IMG/VR virus record: IMGVR_UViG_3300009093_000034
Location: 186,001 to 250,000 of that record
Strand: one strand, 5' to 3'
DNA: 64,000 bases
Shown here: positions 42,432 to 53,819 of the stretch, piece after piece
Layout: each line of letters begins with the position of its first letter
Numbering within the stretch: position 1 is the first letter of the stretch
The notes under the pieces: model-generated
What the model was told of the DNA's origin: nothing
Database searches by the model: none
The model's input: only the letters and a program-made list of their open reading frames with translations
Translations under genes and position numbers: made by a program

Positions 42432-43418
42432 ATGGCAGTAACAATCATCATTGAAGGCCCGAATCTATCGGGAAAGAGTACCTTATCCAAGGCTCTGTCA
42501 GAACGACTTGGAATTCCAGTCGTCCACAACTCTAAGCCTGAAGACGGCTTCAGAGACAATCTCAAGTTCTCCATGGAGAACAAAGAGAACATCATTCTAG
42601 ATCGACACCACCTCGGAGAAGTCGTTTACCCTGCATTGAAGAGGGACGGACGACAGCCCCTTGAGCTATGGGAACAACATATGATCGAGAGAGTTCTTGA
42701 ATCCAAGGGAACGATCTTGATTCTTTGTAGTGCAGACCTTCAGTTTCGACTACAAAAGTTCGATGAGAGAGGTGAAGACTTTGTCACCAAGAATGAGCTT
42801 AAAGATGAAGGAGATCTCTTCGAAGATGCCTTCAATCGAAGCCTTCTCTCCAACAAGTTTGACTATCGTCTTCCTTTTACCGATGAAGATAAGACTGAAC
42901 GATTTCTTGATTTTATAGAAGAAAGATACAACTATCTTCTTGAAATCTCTGAAGAGTTTGAAGAGTATGAACACCAAGGTTATCTTCCTTCAGATCCTTA
43001 CTCTGAGCCCACGGCAGTTATTATCGGAGATAGCTATGGTGACAAAACATCTGTTGGATCTGGAACAAAGAGAGCTTTTGTATCTCCTATTGGATCAAGC
43101 AGACACCTTGCTCAAGCTCTAGCTATGATTCATCGTCCAACAGATAAACTTTACATCACCAATGCTTGGAAGTACATTGATAACAGAGAAGTAAGTCGTC
43201 AAACTCTTGTTGAAGAACTTTATTTTGTTGGAGCTTCCAAATGTCCTATTATTGTTCTTGGTTATGAAGCCAAGAAAGCTTTGGATGGAATCAATACAGA
43301 TGGTCTCTTTTCCCATTATACTTTTGTAAACCATCCTCAGTTTGAGTTTAGGTTCAAGAACAAAGAGATCGGGAGATACGCTAAGGCTCTCGACATTGCA
43401 TTGGGAGTCAACAGGTGA
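42432..43418 (+). CDS. dNMP kinase fused to a uracil-DNA-glycosylase-like domain
   Basis: IEGPNLSGKST, ILDRHH.GE.VY; C-terminal IIGD...YITNA...IVLG..A...NHPQ UDG-superfamily pattern. Confidence 0.75.
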   Translation: MAVTIIIEGPNLSGKSTLSKALSERLGIPVVHNSKPEDGFRDNLKFSMENKENIILDRHHLGEVVYPALKRDGRQPLELWEQHMIERVLESKGTILILCSADLQFRLQKFDERGEDFVTKNELKDEGDLFEDAFNRSLLSNKFDYRLPFTDEDKTERFLDFIEERYNYLLEISEEFEEYEHQGYLPSDPYSEPTAVIIGDSYGDKTSVGSGTKRAFVSPIGSSRHLAQALAMIHRPTDKLYITNAWKYIDNREVSRQTLVEELYFVGASKCPIIVLGYEAKKALDGINTDGLFSHYTFVNHPQFEFRFKNKEIGRYAKALDIALGVNR

Positions 43419-44713
43419 GTCAACAAAACAACAACGGAGTAGCCCAGTCTTTATTCATGGCTCTCAAGTATCTATACGATGAAGGAAAGTTTGTTCCGGA
43501 TAAGACAGGAGTCAAGACTGTTGAGATCGTCAACGGAAGTATCTCTCTAGATCCGCAGTTTCCTTACTTAGACCTGGGAATTTTCAAGGCCAAGGAAGAA
43601 TACATCAAAAAAGAACTTGAGTGGTATCTCTCTCAAAAGTTAAACATCCATCCTATAATGGATGATGTAAAGATTTGGAATGAAGTCTGTGGTAGAAATG
43701 GAGAGATCAACTCCAACTATGGTTGGGCAGTTTTTAGTCCAGAAAACTGGGATCAATTTGGGTATGTTCTCAGTTGCTTAAAGAAAGATAAGTGGTCTCG
43801 TAGAGCTGTTATGCAATACAACAGACCTGTCATGGTAGTAGACTATAACAGAGATGGAATGTCTGATTATCTTTGTACTCTTTCTGTTCAAGTGTTGATC
43901 AGAGATAGCAAACTTTACTACATCGTCACTCAACGATCTTGTGATTTTAGAACAGGTCTTCCTAACGACTTTGCTTGGCACGCTTGGGTTTACAAGTCTC
44001 TTTTCAACTTGTTGAAAGAGGAGTATCCAGATCTTGAATATTCAGAAGATGGTATCCAAATGAACTTTGGGTCTGTTCATCTCTACGAGAGAAATTTTGG
44101 ACTCTTCCAAAAGTGGGAAGAATATCTTCAAGAACAGTCTAAGATCGAACAAGATAAGTTAACAAACTCGATAGCCATTGTTCCTAGAAAAAAGTGGTAT
44201 CCCGCTATGTACTTCACAAAGGTACGAGACGTTCAAAGTCCATTGAGAGCCCATGATACCGATGCGGGTATGGACTTCTATGTTCCTAAATTCTCCGATG
44301 ATTTCATCAGAGACTTTGAAGTAAAGAATCCCAAGATCAAAGTGATCGACAAGATCAACATTGAACTTAAGCCTCATGAAAGAGTCTTGATCCCAAGTGG
44401 AATCAAGGCACACGTTCCTGAGAACCACATGCTCATGACCGAGAACAAATCTGGTGTCGCTTCTAAGCTAGGACTTGACGTTATGGCTAAGATCGTTGAC
44501 GAACCTTACAATGGAGAGATACATCTTTCATTGGCCAACACTTCCAACGAAACCGTACTGATTACAGAAGGACAGAAGTTGGTTCAGTTGATCGCTGTTC
44601 CGGTTTCTTATGTTGTCCCTACAGAGATCACAAACGAAGAGTACCAAAGCCTTCCTCGATGGCAAGAAACTTCCAGAGGTGAAGGTGGGTTTGGCTCAAC
44701 AGGAACAAAGTAA
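43415..44713 (+). CDS. dCMP hydroxymethylase-like (T4 gp42/thymidylate synthase family) fused to trimeric dUTPase
   Basis: GEINSNYGW, RRAVMQYNRP, DGMSDYLCT, QRSCD...GLPND (Asp at the specificity site), GSVHLYER; C-terminal AGMDF, NKSG, VDEPYNGEI, RGEGGFGSTG. Confidence 0.85.
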   Translation: MSQQNNNGVAQSLFMALKYLYDEGKFVPDKTGVKTVEIVNGSISLDPQFPYLDLGIFKAKEEYIKKELEWYLSQKLNIHPIMDDVKIWNEVCGRNGEINSNYGWAVFSPENWDQFGYVLSCLKKDKWSRRAVMQYNRPVMVVDYNRDGMSDYLCTLSVQVLIRDSKLYYIVTQRSCDFRTGLPNDFAWHAWVYKSLFNLLKEEYPDLEYSEDGIQMNFGSVHLYERNFGLFQKWEEYLQEQSKIEQDKLTNSIAIVPRKKWYPAMYFTKVRDVQSPLRAHDTDAGMDFYVPKFSDDFIRDFEVKNPKIKVIDKINIELKPHERVLIPSGIKAHVPENHMLMTENKSGVASKLGLDVMAKIVDEPYNGEIHLSLANTSNETVLITEGQKLVQLIAVPVSYVVPTEITNEEYQSLPRWQETSRGEGGFGSTGTK

Positions 44714-48712: not shown

Positions 48713-48721
48713 TGAGATATT
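48713..48721 (+). promoter_or_regulatory. TGAGATATT promoter motif
   Basis: Followed by AAGGAGG SD and ATG 48750. Confidence 0.7.
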
Positions 48722-50536: not shown

Positions 50537-50782
50537 ATGTTTTCACTCGGATGGTCCTACGAAGCAAGGTCTATTACATTTTCTTTAGACAAGAATGTTA
50601 CGATACACGAATCTGTCAAACAAGAGTTCGAAGTTTTCATAGAGAGTATCTTTGTCAACATGTATGGGAAAGCCATGACAGAGACCTTACGACATCAAAC
50701 AACGAATCAGATAGAGTCTAAGTTATTGTACCTGAAAAGTCAAAACCTAGTGACTATTGATGATCTTCAACTAGCTCACTAA
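50537..50782 (+). CDS. Hypothetical protein (leaderless start)
   Basis: TATACT 6 nt upstream of ATG. Confidence 0.5.
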   Translation: MFSLGWSYEARSITFSLDKNVTIHESVKQEFEVFIESIFVNMYGKAMTETLRHQTTNQIESKLLYLKSQNLVTIDDLQLAH

Positions 50783-50794
50783 CTACAACATCGG

Positions 50795-50824
50795 TAGGAA
50801 TCTCACGGAGAGATTCTGAAAGGA
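50795..50824 (+). promoter_or_regulatory. Leader hairpin copy 1 (GGA loop) before NadM-Nudix
   Basis: TAG-GAATCTC-ACGGA-GAGATTC-TGAAAGGA. Confidence 0.6.
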
Positions 50825-50831
50825 CAACATC

Positions 50832-51905
50832 GTGGATAAGGAATTCACACTAGCAGTTTTTATCTGCCGGGCTCAGCCTTTTCATAAGGCTCATTACGCT
50901 GCTCTTCTCCATGCAGCAAAATATGCTACTCGTTTACTCATCCTAGTAGGAAGTGCAACTAGTGGTCGTAGCACAAGAAATTCTTGGACATATGAAGAAC
51001 GCGTTCGCTTCATTAAAGAATACATCATGTCTAAGGATGAGAGACTCGATTACTCTCACAAGATCGAAATCCGCCCTATCGCAGATAGTGCCTATGATTT
51101 CCATGATTGGCTATTCAGAGCCAAGAAAATCATCCAAGAAACCCAATTCGTAGATCTCCCTCAGGGACAACACAAGATAGCCATCATCCGTCACTACAAA
51201 GACGACACGAGCTACTATCTCAACTACTTCCCAGAATACCAGACCATAGAAACTCCCACGTACGATGATGGGTTTGGAGCTACACAGATCCGTGAAGCTT
51301 ACTTTAGCATAGAGTATGGCGTTGACGGATTTATGTCAAGAATAGCTCTTGAAAAAGAATATCCTTATCTTAAGACGTGGCGAGAAGCCAACAAAGAAAT
51401 TTTCCTCCAACTTCAGCGAGAGTTCGCCTTTGTCAAGGCTTACAAGAAGAGCTGGGAAGGAACTCCCTATCCTGTCAACTTCAGTACCTGCGATGCAGTC
51501 TGTGTCTGCTTGGGTCATGTTCTCTTGATCAAGAGAGGAAGGAATCCTGGAAAAGACCAGCTAGCTTTGCCTGGTGGTTTTTTGAACTTGGATGAGACCT
51601 TTCAGCAAGGCGCTATTCGTGAGCTCCGTGAAGAAACTCACATTGGCCTTTCTGTTCAAACTCTAGAAACTACCATCGCCAATCAACACATCTTCGACCA
51701 TCCTCTTCGTGATCCTCGTGGTCGTTTCATCACCAATGCTTTTCTCTTTGACCTTAAGAAAGAAAAGAGTCTTCCTGAGATAAAAGCAGACGATGATGCT
51801 TCGGAAGCCCTTTGGCTTCCTCTTCAGGATCTTGAGAAGAGAGAAAATGAATTTTTCGCTGACCACGCTCAGATCATCAAGTGGTTCAGGAACAGGATGC
51901 GCTAA
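50832..51905 (+). CDS. Bifunctional NMN/NaMN adenylyltransferase - Nudix ADP-ribose pyrophosphatase (NadM-Nudix)
   Basis: RAQPFHKAH, VGSA, GATQIR; Nudix box GGF...ET....A.RELREET, RDPRGR, ADDDA. Confidence 0.93.
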   Translation: MDKEFTLAVFICRAQPFHKAHYAALLHAAKYATRLLILVGSATSGRSTRNSWTYEERVRFIKEYIMSKDERLDYSHKIEIRPIADSAYDFHDWLFRAKKIIQETQFVDLPQGQHKIAIIRHYKDDTSYYLNYFPEYQTIETPTYDDGFGATQIREAYFSIEYGVDGFMSRIALEKEYPYLKTWREANKEIFLQLQREFAFVKAYKKSWEGTPYPVNFSTCDAVCVCLGHVLLIKRGRNPGKDQLALPGGFLNLDETFQQGAIRELREETHIGLSVQTLETTIANQHIFDHPLRDPRGRFITNAFLFDLKKEKSLPEIKADDDASEALWLPLQDLEKRENEFFADHAQIIKWFRNRMR

Positions 51906-52151
51906 ATGCCAAAACTAGTTCAAGAGCCTTTGATCACATACAAGTGTCAGTGTGGAGCAACTTCTTCAGCAGAGCCTGAAGAGTTCAAAGCCAAGAACAC
52001 TATGCCACCAACTTGGGTCATCAAGTGCGCTTATTGTAACCTTGACGTAGTTTGTTCCCCTAGCGCTATGATCAGTCGTCAAGTTGGATCAATGTCAGAT
52101 CGTGAAGTTCACGGTTACCTAGTCGATAGACTTAGTTTACTTAGAAAATAG
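51906..52151 (+). CDS. Small Zn-ribbon protein
   Basis: CQCG...CAYC. Confidence 0.6.
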   Translation: MPKLVQEPLITYKCQCGATSSAEPEEFKAKNTMPPTWVIKCAYCNLDVVCSPSAMISRQVGSMSDREVHGYLVDRLSLLRK

Positions 52152-52174
52152 ATCACGTTGTGATCTTAGAAATT

Positions 52175-52203
52175 TAGGTCCTCAATGGAGAGGACTGAAA
52201 GGA
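52175..52203 (+). promoter_or_regulatory. Leader hairpin copy 2 (GGA loop) before pncA
   Basis: TAG-GTCCTC-AATGGA-GAGGAC-TGAAAGGA. Confidence 0.6.
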
Positions 52204-52210
52204 GAAAAGA

Positions 52211-53014
52211 ATGATTCGCACAGCACTCGTAATCATCGATCCTCAGAACGACTTCGTTTTGACCGATCAAGATGGTGCTGCTCTTCCTGTTCCAGGAGCT
52301 AAGGCAGACATGGACCGCCTCAGCGACTTTATCAGGAAGAACATCACCAAGTTCAATGAGATTCAGGTCACCCTGGACTCTCACCACCAGTTCCAGATCT
52401 TCCATCCTATGTATTGGACGGATGGAAAGGGTAAGCAGCCGAAGCCTTTCGATAGGATCACGGCCGACGACATTGAGAAGGGAGTTTGGACCACCAAGGT
52501 TCCTTCCCACCGTCAGAGAGCTCTTGAGTACGTCAAGGCTCTGGAGACCGGAGGACGTTATGTCCTCATCATCTGGCCTTACCACTGTCTGATCGGCAGT
52601 TGGGGCGGACAGATCTACGAGCCTCTCTTCAAGACCCTTCTTGATTGGGAGACCACCAACATCGGTATGTTCGGAAAGGTGACCAAGGGTTCCAATCTGT
52701 TCACCGAGCACTACTCGGCTGTCAAGGCTGAAGTTCCGGATCCTCAGGATCCCACAACTCAGTTGAACCAGGACTTCATCGACATTCTGGCAAACCCGGA
52801 CATCGATCAGGTTCTCGTCGCTGGTGAAGCTTTGGACTTCTGTCTTTACAACTCGGCTCTCGACGTGGCCAACGCCCTTGGTGTTGATCAGGCCAAGAAG
52901 ATCAAGGTTCTTGAGGACTGCACAAGTCCCATCTACCCTGATGCTGTGGCTCGTGTCAAGGCAGATCTCGGAGCCAAGGGTGTTCAGTTCATCACCACGG
53001 CTACCGCGTTCTAA
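52211..53014 (+). CDS. pncA: Nicotinamidase (isochorismatase family)
   Basis: IIDPQNDF, LPVPGA, TLDSH, WPYHC, KG, GEALDFC. Confidence 0.9.
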   Translation: MIRTALVIIDPQNDFVLTDQDGAALPVPGAKADMDRLSDFIRKNITKFNEIQVTLDSHHQFQIFHPMYWTDGKGKQPKPFDRITADDIEKGVWTTKVPSHRQRALEYVKALETGGRYVLIIWPYHCLIGSWGGQIYEPLFKTLLDWETTNIGMFGKVTKGSNLFTEHYSAVKAEVPDPQDPTTQLNQDFIDILANPDIDQVLVAGEALDFCLYNSALDVANALGVDQAKKIKVLEDCTSPIYPDAVARVKADLGAKGVQFITTATAF

Positions 53015-53791: not shown

Positions 53792-53819
53792 TTCCCCTGT
53801 GAAAACAGGGGAACTTCTT
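53792..53819 (+). terminator. Hairpin/terminator after pncA-vWA
   Basis: TTCCCCTGT-GAAA-ACAGGGGAA then CTTCTT. Confidence 0.65.

What the first reader, a model, noticed from the sequence alone, without database searches (positions are those of the whole stretch)
50795..52203. Covarying GGA-loop hairpin shared by the leaders of the two NAD-salvage genes
Seen: TAG-GAATCTC-ACGGA-GAGATTC-TGAAAGGA before NadM-Nudix (50795-50824) and TAG-GTCCTC-AATGGA-GAGGAC-TGAAAGGA before pncA (52175-52203). The stems differ in sequence but both pair fully, while the flanks, the CTC/GAG closing pairs and the loop AYGGA are conserved. I did not notice this element before other genes. Known: an ANGGA hairpin loop plus a second GGA in the SD is the canonical CsrA/RsmA site. 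Inference: a translational operator (host CsrA or a phage protein), or an undescribed small cis-regulatory RNA that co-regulates NAD genes.
Basis: partly seen in the sequence, partly recalled or inferred. Interest (0 to 1): 0.7.

Follow-up and report, generated by a model that had tools for sequence, protein, structure and literature searches.

The report
Phage NAD-salvage leader RNA hairpin
The two look-alike hairpins are real copies of a previously undescribed, structurally conserved mRNA leader element that uncultured phages place in front of their NAD-salvage and NAD-precursor-transport genes, so it is most likely a dedicated RNA switch or operator for the phage's NAD-rebuilding genes.

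Summary
Observation confirmed. Both hairpins are at the stated coordinates, 14 nt before the starts of NadM-Nudix (50832) and a nicotinamidase-like gene (52211). They are the only two such sites in the complete 305,833-bp phage genome.

They belong to a family. A covariance model found 41 distinct copies in uncultured phage and metagenome contigs with 23-64% G+C. All are in sense orientation, 12-29 nt before NAD genes: NadM-Nudix 29, PnuC 4, NAMPT 3, PncA-like 3, radical SAM 1.

The 7-bp stem covaries strongly: 99% of cells paired, compensatory changes in 6 of 7 pairs. Nearly invariant are UAG 5' of the stem, loop A-N-R-G-A, and GAAA 3' of it.

The model found nothing in 480 kb of unrelated phage DNA or before chromosomal or cultured-phage NadM-Nudix genes. 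Rfam 15 has no match.

The CsrA reading fails for the family: only 25 of 41 loops hold GGA.

The mechanism is inferred. I favour a translational operator for a module-encoded protein, NadM-Nudix being the only universal neighbour (about 0.4), over a very small NAD-pathway riboswitch (about 0.25).

The parts
50794..50824 (+). Element copy 1 before NadM-Nudix. It reads G-UAG, then an 8-bp stem (50797-50804 with 50810-50817), loop ACGGA (50805-50809), tail GAAA (50818-50821), and the SD AAGGA overlapping the tail (50820-50824).
   Evidence: Sequence. Fold -9.2 kcal/mol. CM R2 gives 32.0 bits, E 1.3e-7. The copy is identical in a 90-95% related soil strain whose upstream ORF end is variable.
52174..52204 (+). 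Element copy 2 before the nicotinamidase-like gene. It reads U-UAG, then a 7-bp stem (52177-52183 with 52190-52196), loop AAUGGA (52184-52189), tail GAAA (52197-52200), and the SD AAGGAG (52199-52204).
   Evidence: Sequence. Fold -10.6 kcal/mol. CM R2 gives 35.2 bits, E 9e-9.
50832..51905 (+). NadM-Nudix gene (bifunctional NMN adenylyltransferase / ADP-ribose pyrophosphatase, 357 aa, GTG start). It is the regulated gene of copy 1 and the candidate trans-acting partner.
   Evidence: Pfam CTP_transf_like + NUDIX. NCBIfam NF003786 at E 5.8e-86.
51906..52151 (+). 81-aa Cys-rich ORF between the two NAD genes. It has no family and is not conserved in the other element-bearing loci.
   Evidence: No Pfam or NCBIfam match. 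No shared family in the all-against-all clustering of loci.
52211..53014 (+). Isochorismatase-family, nicotinamidase-like gene (PncA-like, 267 aa). It is the regulated gene of copy 2.
   Evidence: Pfam PF00857 at E 9e-9. Best solved relatives are nicotinamidases 2h0r, 1ilw and 3pl1. Homologues in L070 and L403 carry the same element.
52150..52166 (+). Separate perfect 7-bp hairpin AGATCAC-GTT-GTGATCT overlapping the stop codon of the 81-aa ORF, 10 nt upstream of copy 2. It is not part of the family consensus.
   Evidence: It is absent from the family alignment.

Best explanation
The two hairpins are members of a previously undescribed family of structured mRNA leader elements. Uncultured phages carry this family only in front of genes of their NAD salvage and transport module: NadM-Nudix, NAMPT, PncA-like nicotinamidase, PnuC and NadE-like.

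The element acts as RNA, in cis. A constitutively folded 7-8 bp hairpin displays an invariant loop (A-N-R-G-A closed by C-G) and an invariant base (U-A-G on the 5' side, Y-G-A-A-A on the 3' side). It sits 12-29 nt upstream of the start codon, directly abutting or overlapping the Shine-Dalgarno sequence.

I propose it is a translational operator. A trans-acting factor that reports NAD status docks on the loop and base and occludes the neighbouring ribosome-binding site. Every cistron that carries a copy is then throttled together. Release, for example when NAD falls or ADP-ribose and nicotinamide rise after a host NAD-depleting defence fires, turns the module on.

The partner I favour is a module-encoded protein. 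NadM-Nudix is the only gene present in every element-bearing locus, and its two nucleotide-binding domains could couple RNA binding to NAD, NMN or ADPR.

Shown:
- the structure
- the sense-strand (RNA) nature of the element
- the restriction to NAD genes
- the position next to the SD

Inferred:
- translational control
- the direction of regulation
- the identity of the partner

I put about 0.9 on this being a dedicated cis-regulatory RNA family of phage NAD genes. I put about 0.4 on the protein-operator mechanism.
For: Structure:
- 41 distinct copies, 99.0% of cells paired, compensatory changes in 6 of 7 pairs.
- Covariation score 1.056 against 0.285 for shuffles (0 of 500 reach it) and at most 0.21 for slid registers (the earlier 32-sequence set is).
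- An independent MAFFT + RNAalifold run, not fitted to the model, recovers the same single hairpin and no other helix.

RNA rather than DNA:
- All copies are in the sense orientation of the downstream gene.
- 43 of 287 cells are G.U pairs, which would be A.C mismatches on the other strand.

Gene association (Pfam; precomputed Pfam):
- NadM-Nudix 29
- PnuC 4
- NAMPT 3
- PncA-like 3
- radical SAM 1
- NadE-like weak

Specificity:
- 0 hits in 480 kb of unrelated phage loci.
- None before chromosomal NadM-Nudix of Burkholderia, Comamonas or Halomonas.
- None in 9 cultured phages with NadM-Nudix + NAMPT.
- In five whole viral records of up to 329 kb it occurs only at the NAD locus.
- One hit each in two MAGs of about 4 Mb.
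- An unbiased IMG/VR pattern scan gave 13 matches. The only 3 with a fully paired stem all lie at NadM-Nudix or NAMPT.

Protein-operator leaning:
- The element is a simple unbranched hairpin with sequence-specific loop and base and no alternative fold.
- There are up to three copies per operon, one per cistron.
- NadM-Nudix is the only family shared by all loci.
- Three PnuC loci with NadM-Nudix have the element before pnuC. Two PnuC loci without NadM-Nudix within 8 kb do not.
- Presence of the element clusters on the NadM-Nudix tree, needing 6 changes against 27 for shuffled labels.
Against: - There is no direct evidence of any binding or of regulation, and no RNA-seq run was listed for this phage.
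- NadM-Nudix has no known RNA-binding domain. The element-associated proteins show no clade-specific basic insert or charge shift.
- Many phages have NadM-Nudix without the element.
- In L085 the element precedes the radical-SAM and NAMPT genes but not NadM-Nudix itself.
- The co-occurrence with NadM-Nudix is partly built into how the loci were found. The PnuC test has n=5, and shared ancestry could explain it.
- A regulon of biosynthesis plus transporter genes spread across hosts of very different G+C is the classic signature of a riboswitch.
- The phage's own pncB lacks the element.
- The complex-prediction tool did not fold the protein-RNA job, so it gives no evidence either way.
Confidence: 0.4

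Rival explanations
1. It is a very small riboswitch, a third NAD-pathway class. The hairpin with its UAG and GAAA flanks binds NAD+, NMN/NR, nicotinamide or ADP-ribose directly. Ligand binding docks the A-rich tail, and the adjoining SD, onto the helix and so changes translation.
For: - The regulon is riboswitch-like, combining synthesis genes (nadM, nadV, pncA-like, nadE-like) with the precursor transporter pnuC.
- The element occurs in contigs of 23-64% G+C, which argues against dependence on one host factor.
- Invariant unpaired nucleotides flank a covarying stem.
- In about half of the copies the SD follows GAAA directly, as GAAAGG or GAAGGAG.
- Both known NAD+ riboswitch classes are rare and taxonomically narrow, and further classes were predicted (PMC7749635).
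- NAD+-II also uses an A-rich strand in a helix groove (abstract of PMC10085692).
Against: - There is no internal loop, junction or pseudoknot that could form a pocket. RNAalifold finds only one plain 7-bp helix.
- The hairpin is stable on its own, and no competing fold with the SD is conserved.
- The distance from the element to the SD varies from 0 to about 15 nt, so a common expression platform is not evident.
- Up to three copies occur inside one operon.
- There is no match to the nadA or pnuC models in Rfam.
Confidence: 0.25
2. It is a constitutive mRNA stabiliser or processing signal. A 5'-terminal or intercistronic hairpin protects the NAD-gene messages from 5'-end-dependent decay, or marks a cleavage site, without sensing anything.
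For: - A -10-like hexamer ends 4-9 nt upstream of the purine before UAG in 19 of 34 copies, against 13% at random positions. Many copies would therefore sit 2-3 nt from the 5' end of the transcript.
- The hairpins are stable and leave the SD free.
- Established knowledge (from memory): 5'-terminal stem-loops with few unpaired 5' nucleotides stabilise bacterial mRNAs.
Against: - A pure stabiliser needs no invariant loop or flank nucleotides, and it would not be confined to NAD genes. These phages have hundreds of other genes without it.
- The window's two copies have no promoter directly upstream. The nearest phage promoter-like motifs are at 48714 and 49250.
Confidence: 0.12
3. It is a host CsrA/RsmA site. 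A CsrA dimer bridges the loop GGA and the SD GGA and represses translation.
For: - Both window copies have A(N)NGGA in the loop and GGA in the SD 14 nt downstream.
- That geometry fits CsrA sites as known from the literature (from memory).
Against: - GGA is present in only 25 of 41 family loops.
- The invariant UAG and GAAA have no role in CsrA binding.
- The element is restricted to NAD genes, whereas CsrA regulons are broad.
- The phage has no CsrA gene.
- The host is unknown.
- Other GGA-loop hairpins near SDs exist elsewhere in this genome without the family flanks.
Confidence: 0.05
4. It is a chance resemblance, or a recent local duplication of a leader with no function.
For: With only the two window copies, the compensatory changes number 2-3 pairs, which is weak on its own.
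Against: - 41 distinct copies occur in unrelated contigs, with 99% pairing.
- The flanking proteins are only 35-50% identical, while the loop and base nucleotides are invariant.
Confidence: 0.01

Closest known systems
NAD+-II riboswitch (pnuC motif) and NAD+-I riboswitch (nadA motif)
   Same: They are cis-acting 5' leader RNAs before NAD genes, and pnuC is among the controlled genes. They lie next to the ribosome-binding site. NAD+-II also has an A-rich strand following a helix.
   Different: - NAD+-II is about 65 nt with P1, P1a and a pseudoknot, and is confined to Streptococcus.
- NAD+-I is a tandem of bulged stem-loops in Acidobacteria (PMC7749635).
- The element here is a single unbranched 7-bp hairpin of about 30 nt, carried by phages.
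- It has no Rfam match at E<=5-10 in 15 sources, the window and 14 loci.
- Ligand binding is untested.
Phage and bacterial translational operators bound by proteins (T4 gp43 and RegA operators, MS2 coat-protein hairpin, B. subtilis PyrR binding loop)
   Same: It is a short hairpin with sequence-specific loop and flanking nucleotides, sitting at or just 5' of the SD. It can be repeated before several cistrons. In these precedents an enzyme, or a protein related to one, acts as the regulator (from memory). Some family loops (C-AGAGA-G) resemble the PyrR loop as I recall it.
   Different: No cognate protein is identified or tested. NadM-Nudix has no known RNA-binding activity. The PyrR family (Rfam) does not match. 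The regulon is NAD salvage, for which no RNA operator of this kind is described in the library searched.
CsrA/RsmA binding sites
   Same: The window's two copies have an A(N)GGA loop plus a GGA in the SD.
   Different: GGA is not conserved in the family (25 of 41). The family invariants lie elsewhere, and the gene association is narrow.
Guanidine-II (mini-ykkC) and preQ1-I riboswitches, the smallest known aptamers
   Same: They are comparable in size, with a conserved small loop closed by C-G (guanidine-II) or a hairpin followed by an A-rich tail next to the SD (preQ1-I). This comparison is from memory.
   Different: Guanidine-II needs two hairpins in tandem that kiss. Here there is usually one per leader, and the copies are about 1 kb or more apart. 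preQ1-I forms a pseudoknot between loop and tail, and no such complementarity is conserved here.

Membership tests
CsrA/RsmA binding site | GGA, usually A(N)GGA, presented in a hairpin loop | tested here: not met
   This is met in the two window copies. At family level only 25 of 41 loops contain GGA, and the others are AGAGA, ACAGA, AAAGA, AATGA, AGATA or AGGTA.
CsrA/RsmA binding site | Second GGA overlapping the SD at dimer-bridging distance | tested here: inconclusive
   Both window copies have a GGA in the SD 14 nt after the loop GGA. In relatives the SD lies 0-15 nt further away and is often GAGG or GGAG.
CsrA/RsmA binding site | CsrA present in the phage or host | tested here: inconclusive
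   The complete phage genome has no PF02599 match. The host is unknown; the phage comes from a rhizosphere metagenome.
NAD+-I (nadA) / NAD+-II (pnuC) riboswitches | Match to the family covariance model and architecture (tandem bulged stem-loops, or P1-P1a-pseudoknot) | tested here: not met
   No Rfam 15 hit at the element at E<=10 (window) or E<=5 (14 loci). Only one unbranched helix is predicted.
Riboswitch (generic) | Conserved structure with covariation plus invariant unpaired nucleotides | tested here: met
Riboswitch (generic) | Association with genes of one metabolic pathway, including a transporter | tested here: met
   The downstream genes are NadM-Nudix, NAMPT, PncA-like, PnuC and NadE-like.
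Riboswitch (generic) | Expression platform, meaning a ligand-dependent alternative fold, terminator or SD sequestration | tested here: not met
   No conserved second helix was found. The hairpin is the MFE and centroid structure, and the SD stays unpaired. No U-tract follows the stem.
Riboswitch (generic) | Direct, selective ligand binding | not testable with these tools
   This needs in-line probing, ITC or SHAPE with NAD-related ligands.
Protein-bound translational operator | Hairpin with sequence-specific loop and flanks inside the ribosome-binding region | tested here: met
   The 3' end of the stem lies 12-29 nt before the start codon. The loop and base nucleotides are invariant.
Protein-bound translational operator | Cognate protein encoded with the operator | tested here: inconclusive
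   NadM-Nudix is the only family in all loci. The element is absent from two PnuC loci that lack NadM-Nudix within 8 kb. However, the sampling was NadM-centred, there is no RNA-binding signature, and the complex job was not folded.
Intrinsic (Rho-independent) terminator | G+C-rich stem followed by a U-run | tested here: not met
   The stem is followed by GAAA(G/C). The terminator scan does not list either site.

The most novel reading that the evidence does not exclude
The element is a new, minimal class of metabolite-sensing RNA, a third riboswitch class for the NAD pathway sensing NAD+, NMN/NR, nicotinamide or ADP-ribose. Phages carry it so that their NAD-reconstitution genes are translated exactly when a host NAD-depleting defence has fired.
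Probability: 0.25. Interest if true: 0.92.

Novelty: new member of a known kind. Interest (0 to 1): 0.78.

Why it matters
Many bacterial defence systems kill phage infections by destroying NAD+, and phages answer with their own NAD-rebuilding enzymes. Nothing is known about how phages control those genes.

This element is a compact, portable RNA signal dedicated to that module. It has 41 covarying examples, it is absent from Rfam, and I found no description of it in the literature I could search.

If it binds a metabolite, it would be a third and unusually small NAD-pathway riboswitch, and the first one carried by phages. If it binds NadM-Nudix, it would be a new case of a metabolic enzyme feeding back on its own operon through RNA.

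Either way it gives a directly testable handle of about 30 nt on the timing of a phage counter-defence. It is also a marker for finding NAD modules in metagenomes and a candidate small regulatory part.

Tried and rejected
- Nucleotide-level relatives: the phage has none in GenBank phages. Its best NadM-Nudix homologue among 5.8 billion proteins is 50% identical. An exact-motif scan of IMG/VR with the window's own flanks found nothing. Relatives had to be reached through proteins.
- First look at homologues: upstream regions of 30 distant isochorismatase and NadM loci (L001-L049) showed no element.
- Rfam: three searches gave no family.
- RNA-seq: no RNA run was listed, so 5' ends and processing could not be examined. 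DNA contigs only showed that a 90-95% related strain keeps copy 1 unchanged.
- Complex prediction of NadM-Nudix with the RNA: the tool did not fold it, so it is no evidence either way.
- Larger structure: I looked for pairing of the 5' flank with the tail, a loop-tail pseudoknot, and a leader peptide starting in ATG-containing loops. None is consistent across the alignment.
- Clade-specific RNA-binding features in element-associated NadM-Nudix proteins: none found.
- A shared small partner ORF such as the 81-aa Cys-rich protein: none found.
- NAD-capping idea (transcripts starting at the A of UAG): I considered and set it aside. The base before that A is an invariant U, which does not fit the promoter preference as I recall it, and intercistronic copies have no promoter.
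- T4 RegB-type GGAG cleavage site: GGAG is not conserved.
A tighter pattern gave an exhaustive list.
- One borderline model hit in a Spirochaetota chromosome lacks UAG and lies inside an ORF. I treated it as chance.
Full report
**1. The observation**

- Copy 1 is UAG, an 8-bp stem (50797-50804 with 50810-50817, outermost pair G.U), loop ACGGA, GAAA, then the SD AAGGA. The GTG start of a 357-aa gene is at 50832.
- Copy 2 is UAG, a 7-bp stem (52177-52183 with 52190-52196), loop AAUGGA, GAAA, then the SD AAGGAG. The ATG start of a 267-aa gene is at 52211.
- In both copies the stem ends 14 nt before the start codon.
- Each element folds as its minimum-energy and centroid structure, at -9.2 and -10.6 kcal/mol with z about -2.6.
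- The first gene is a bifunctional NadM-Nudix enzyme: Pfam CTP_transf_like + NUDIX, and NCBIfam at E 6e-86.
- The second gene is an isochorismatase-family protein whose nearest solved relatives are nicotinamidases. "pncA-like" is therefore a fair name.

The window is bases 186001-250000 of a complete 305,833-bp virus record with direct terminal repeats and 43.7% G+C. It comes from a rhizosphere metagenome. In that whole genome the octamer TGAAAGGA follows a hairpin only at these two sites.

**2. It is a family, not a pair**

The phage has no close relatives. GenBank phages give at most 38% protein identity, and the best of 5.8 billion proteins is 50% identical.

The 50%-identical NadM-Nudix genes (L061-L064) nevertheless carry the same arrangement: TAG, a 7-bp stem, ACGGA or ACAGA, the return arm, then CGAAAGG. 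The stem sequence is entirely different.

A metagenome scan with a NadM-Nudix alignment showed the arrangement before many genes that are only 35-45% identical. I built a covariance model from 22 copies (R1) and refined it with 35 copies (R2).

The final set is 41 distinct copies, all in the sense orientation of the downstream gene.

- 99.0% of stem cells are paired.
- 6 of 7 pairs show compensatory double changes. The seventh is always G-Y.
- The covariation score is 1.056, against 0.285 for column shuffles (0 of 500 reach it) and at most 0.21 for slid registers.
- A MAFFT alignment of longer stretches, not fitted to the model, gives the same single hairpin with RNAalifold and no further conserved helix.
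- 43 of 287 cells are G.U pairs. The structure therefore exists on the sense strand only, which means in the RNA.

**3. Anatomy of the family**

| Position | Conservation |
|---|---|
| Purine before U-A-G | 38 of 41 |
| U | 41 of 41 |
| A | 40 of 41 |
| G (pairs with the Y that precedes GAAA) | 40 of 41 |
| Closing pair | C-G 37, U-A 4 |
| Loop first A | 40 of 41 |
| Loop G (fourth position) | 39 of 41 |
| Loop last A | 41 of 41 |
| 3' flank G | 38 of 41 |
| 3' flank A, A, A | 40, 40, 32 of 41 |

- Five freely covarying pairs lie between the G-Y pair and the closing pair.
- The loop is A-N-R-G-A. Its third position is G in 25 copies and A in 15.
- After GAAA comes either GG, which is the SD itself as in the window, or CA followed 3-15 nt later by a separate SD.
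- The start codon lies 12-29 nt after the stem.
- In 19 of 34 copies a -10-like hexamer ends 4-9 nt before the purine that precedes UAG, against 13% at random positions. Many copies would therefore begin the transcript.
- Other copies are intercistronic. Both window copies are of this kind: no sigma-70-like promoter lies directly upstream. The nearest copies of this phage's own promoter-like motif GAGATATTGTA are at 48714 and 49250.

**4. Gene association and specificity**

Downstream genes of the 41 copies:

| Gene | Copies |
|---|---|
| NadM-Nudix | 29 |
| PnuC (NMN/NR transporter) | 4 |
| NAMPT/NadV | 3 |
| PncA-like isochorismatase | 3 |
| Radical SAM gene inside a NAD cluster | 1 |

There are also weaker copies before NadE-like genes. 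Some contigs have three copies in 5 kb, one per cistron (L403: NadM-Nudix, PnuC and PncA).

Controls:
- No hit in 480 kb of unrelated phage loci, including 48 isochorismatase loci of other phages.
- No hit before chromosomal NadM-Nudix genes of Burkholderia, Paraburkholderia, Comamonas, Halomonas and others.
- No hit in nine cultured phages with NadM-Nudix + NAMPT, with hosts Synechococcus, Ruegeria, Pseudomonas, Stenotrophomonas, Xanthomonas, E. coli (RB16) and Mesorhizobium.
- In five whole viral records of 8-329 kb the element occurs only at the NAD locus.
- In two MAGs of about 4 Mb it occurs once each, at the NadM-Nudix gene.
- In 151 Spirochaetota genomes only that MAG has it. One further borderline hit lies inside an ORF and lacks UAG.
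- An unbiased IMG/VR scan with a degenerate pattern gave 13 matches. The 3 whose stems pair fully all lie at NadM-Nudix or NAMPT genes.

In the window's own genome a pncB gene (G000:C1:261773-262969) has no copy. The regulon is therefore "most of the NAD module", not every NAD gene.

Rfam 15 has no family for the element. Full-text searches for NAD riboswitches or RNA motifs linked to nadM, nadV or phages found nothing that describes it.

**5. What it is not**

*CsrA.* The defining GGA is missing from 16 of 41 loops, and the invariants lie elsewhere. The regulon is narrow, the phage has no CsrA gene, and the carriers range from 23 to 64% G+C. For this one phage, whose copies do have GGA in the loop and the SD, opportunistic CsrA binding cannot be excluded. 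It is not what the family is conserved for.

*Terminator.* No U-run follows the stem.

*NAD+-I or NAD+-II riboswitch.* The architecture is different and there is no model match.

*Chance or a recent duplication.* The family excludes this.

**6. Mechanism (inferred)**

Three things are shown. The element is a constitutively stable RNA hairpin. Its loop and base are sequence-specific. It sits against the ribosome-binding site of NAD genes.

Two classes of partner fit this picture.

(a) A protein. I favour this reading at about 0.4.
- Plain hairpins with invariant loop and flanks and no alternative fold are typical protein operators.
- Repetition before individual cistrons fits a translational repressor.
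- NadM-Nudix is the only gene shared by all loci.
- Three PnuC loci with NadM-Nudix carry the element before pnuC. Two PnuC + NadR loci without NadM-Nudix within 8 kb do not.
- Presence of the element clusters on the NadM-Nudix tree, needing 6 changes against 27 for shuffled labels.
- A nucleotide-binding enzyme whose RNA affinity depends on NAD, NMN or ADPR would give feedback control.

Against the protein reading:
- No RNA-binding signature appears in these proteins.
- Many NadM-Nudix phages lack the element.
- My sampling was centred on NadM-Nudix.

(b) A metabolite, about 0.25. A regulon of synthesis plus transporter genes across diverse carriers is riboswitch-like. But there is no pocket-forming junction, no conserved expression platform, and the spacing to the SD is variable.

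A purely constitutive stabiliser (about 0.12) does not explain the invariant nucleotides or the restriction to NAD genes.

The base of the helix (G-U-A / G-A-A) resembles a bulged-G or loop-E arrangement, and the loop A1/G4 pattern recalls ANTAR and PyrR loops. Both are recollections and were not tested.

**7. Context and novelty**

The neighbouring genes in relatives include anti-Pycsar Apyc1, radical SAM, RNA ligase and tRNA arrays. The NAD module therefore sits among counter-defence and takeover genes.

The phage route here would be nicotinamide to nicotinate (PncA-like), then to NaMN (PncB), then adenylylation (NadM). That order is inferred from the families.

The element is a new RNA family within a known kind, cis-regulatory leader RNAs. 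Its partner and logic are open, and it is small enough to be tested directly.

**8. Verdict**

My confidence is about 0.9 that this is a dedicated cis-regulatory RNA family for phage NAD genes, and 0.4 for the protein-operator mechanism. Interest 0.78.

Noticed in passing
window 8879, 39496, 41660, 48714, 49250, 62453 (+) and 25007 (-); 28 sites genome-wide: A 12-mer, GAGATATT(G/A)TA, usually preceded by CT or TT, recurs 28 times in the 305-kb genome, 27 of them on the + strand. It sits 10-30 nt before an SD and start codon. It looks like this phage's own (extended -10-like) promoter. Relatives L061/L064 have a similar TATATTATAG directly before their NAD leader element.
   Followed up: partly
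window 52150-52166: A perfect 7-bp hairpin, AGATCAC-GTT-GTGATCT, overlaps the stop codon of the 81-aa ORF, 10 nt upstream of element copy 2. The scan lists it as terminator-like on the minus strand. Its role is unknown; it could be a processing site, an attenuator or an operator.
   Followed up: no
window 51906-52151: An 81-aa Cys-rich ORF (CxC ... CxxC, zinc-ribbon-like) is wedged between NadM-Nudix and the PncA-like gene. It has no Pfam or NCBIfam family and no homologue in the other element-bearing loci.
   Followed up: partly
G000:C1:261773-262969 (outside the window, about 11.8 kb past its end): The phage also encodes a nicotinate phosphoribosyltransferase (PncB; NAPRTase_N + NAPRTase). 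It follows a small hydrophobic ORF and has no copy of the element. Together with the PncA-like gene and NadM-Nudix this suggests a Preiss-Handler-type salvage route.
   Followed up: partly
window 50743-50770 versus 50783-50891 (run X2): A 90-95% related strain in a soil metagenome has 6 substitutions and 9 deleted bases in the last 40 nt of the upstream ORF. It has no listed difference across element copy 1 and the start of nadM.
   Followed up: partly
window 43415-44713: A single 432-aa ORF combines thymidylate synthase (N-terminal) and dUTPase (C-terminal) PHROG matches. It appears to be a fusion of two nucleotide-metabolism enzymes.
   Followed up: no
window about 53792-53813; also genome 39808, 63120, 122760 upstream regions: Several G+C-rich hairpins with GAAA or GTAA tetraloops followed by T-runs lie between genes, for example TTCCCCTGT-gaaa-ACAGGGGAA before the gene at window 53832. 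They look like intrinsic terminators with GNRA loops.
   Followed up: no
L061 700-4560 and 8976-10990; L403-L405: In relatives the NAD module is embedded among tRNA arrays (13 tRNAs in L061), anti-Pycsar Apyc1, radical SAM and RNA ligase genes. In L405 a TROVE (Ro60-like) gene and ClpS/Clp ATPase genes are also present. This looks like a counter-defence and takeover neighbourhood.
   Followed up: no
L227 2965-3000, L282 795-830, L234 3994-4029: In some AT-rich relatives the true SD is itself displayed in the loop of a second small hairpin (C-AAAGGA-G, C-GAGGA-G). That loop resembles the family loop, which hints that the element's loop may have evolved from, or may mimic, an SD.
   Followed up: no
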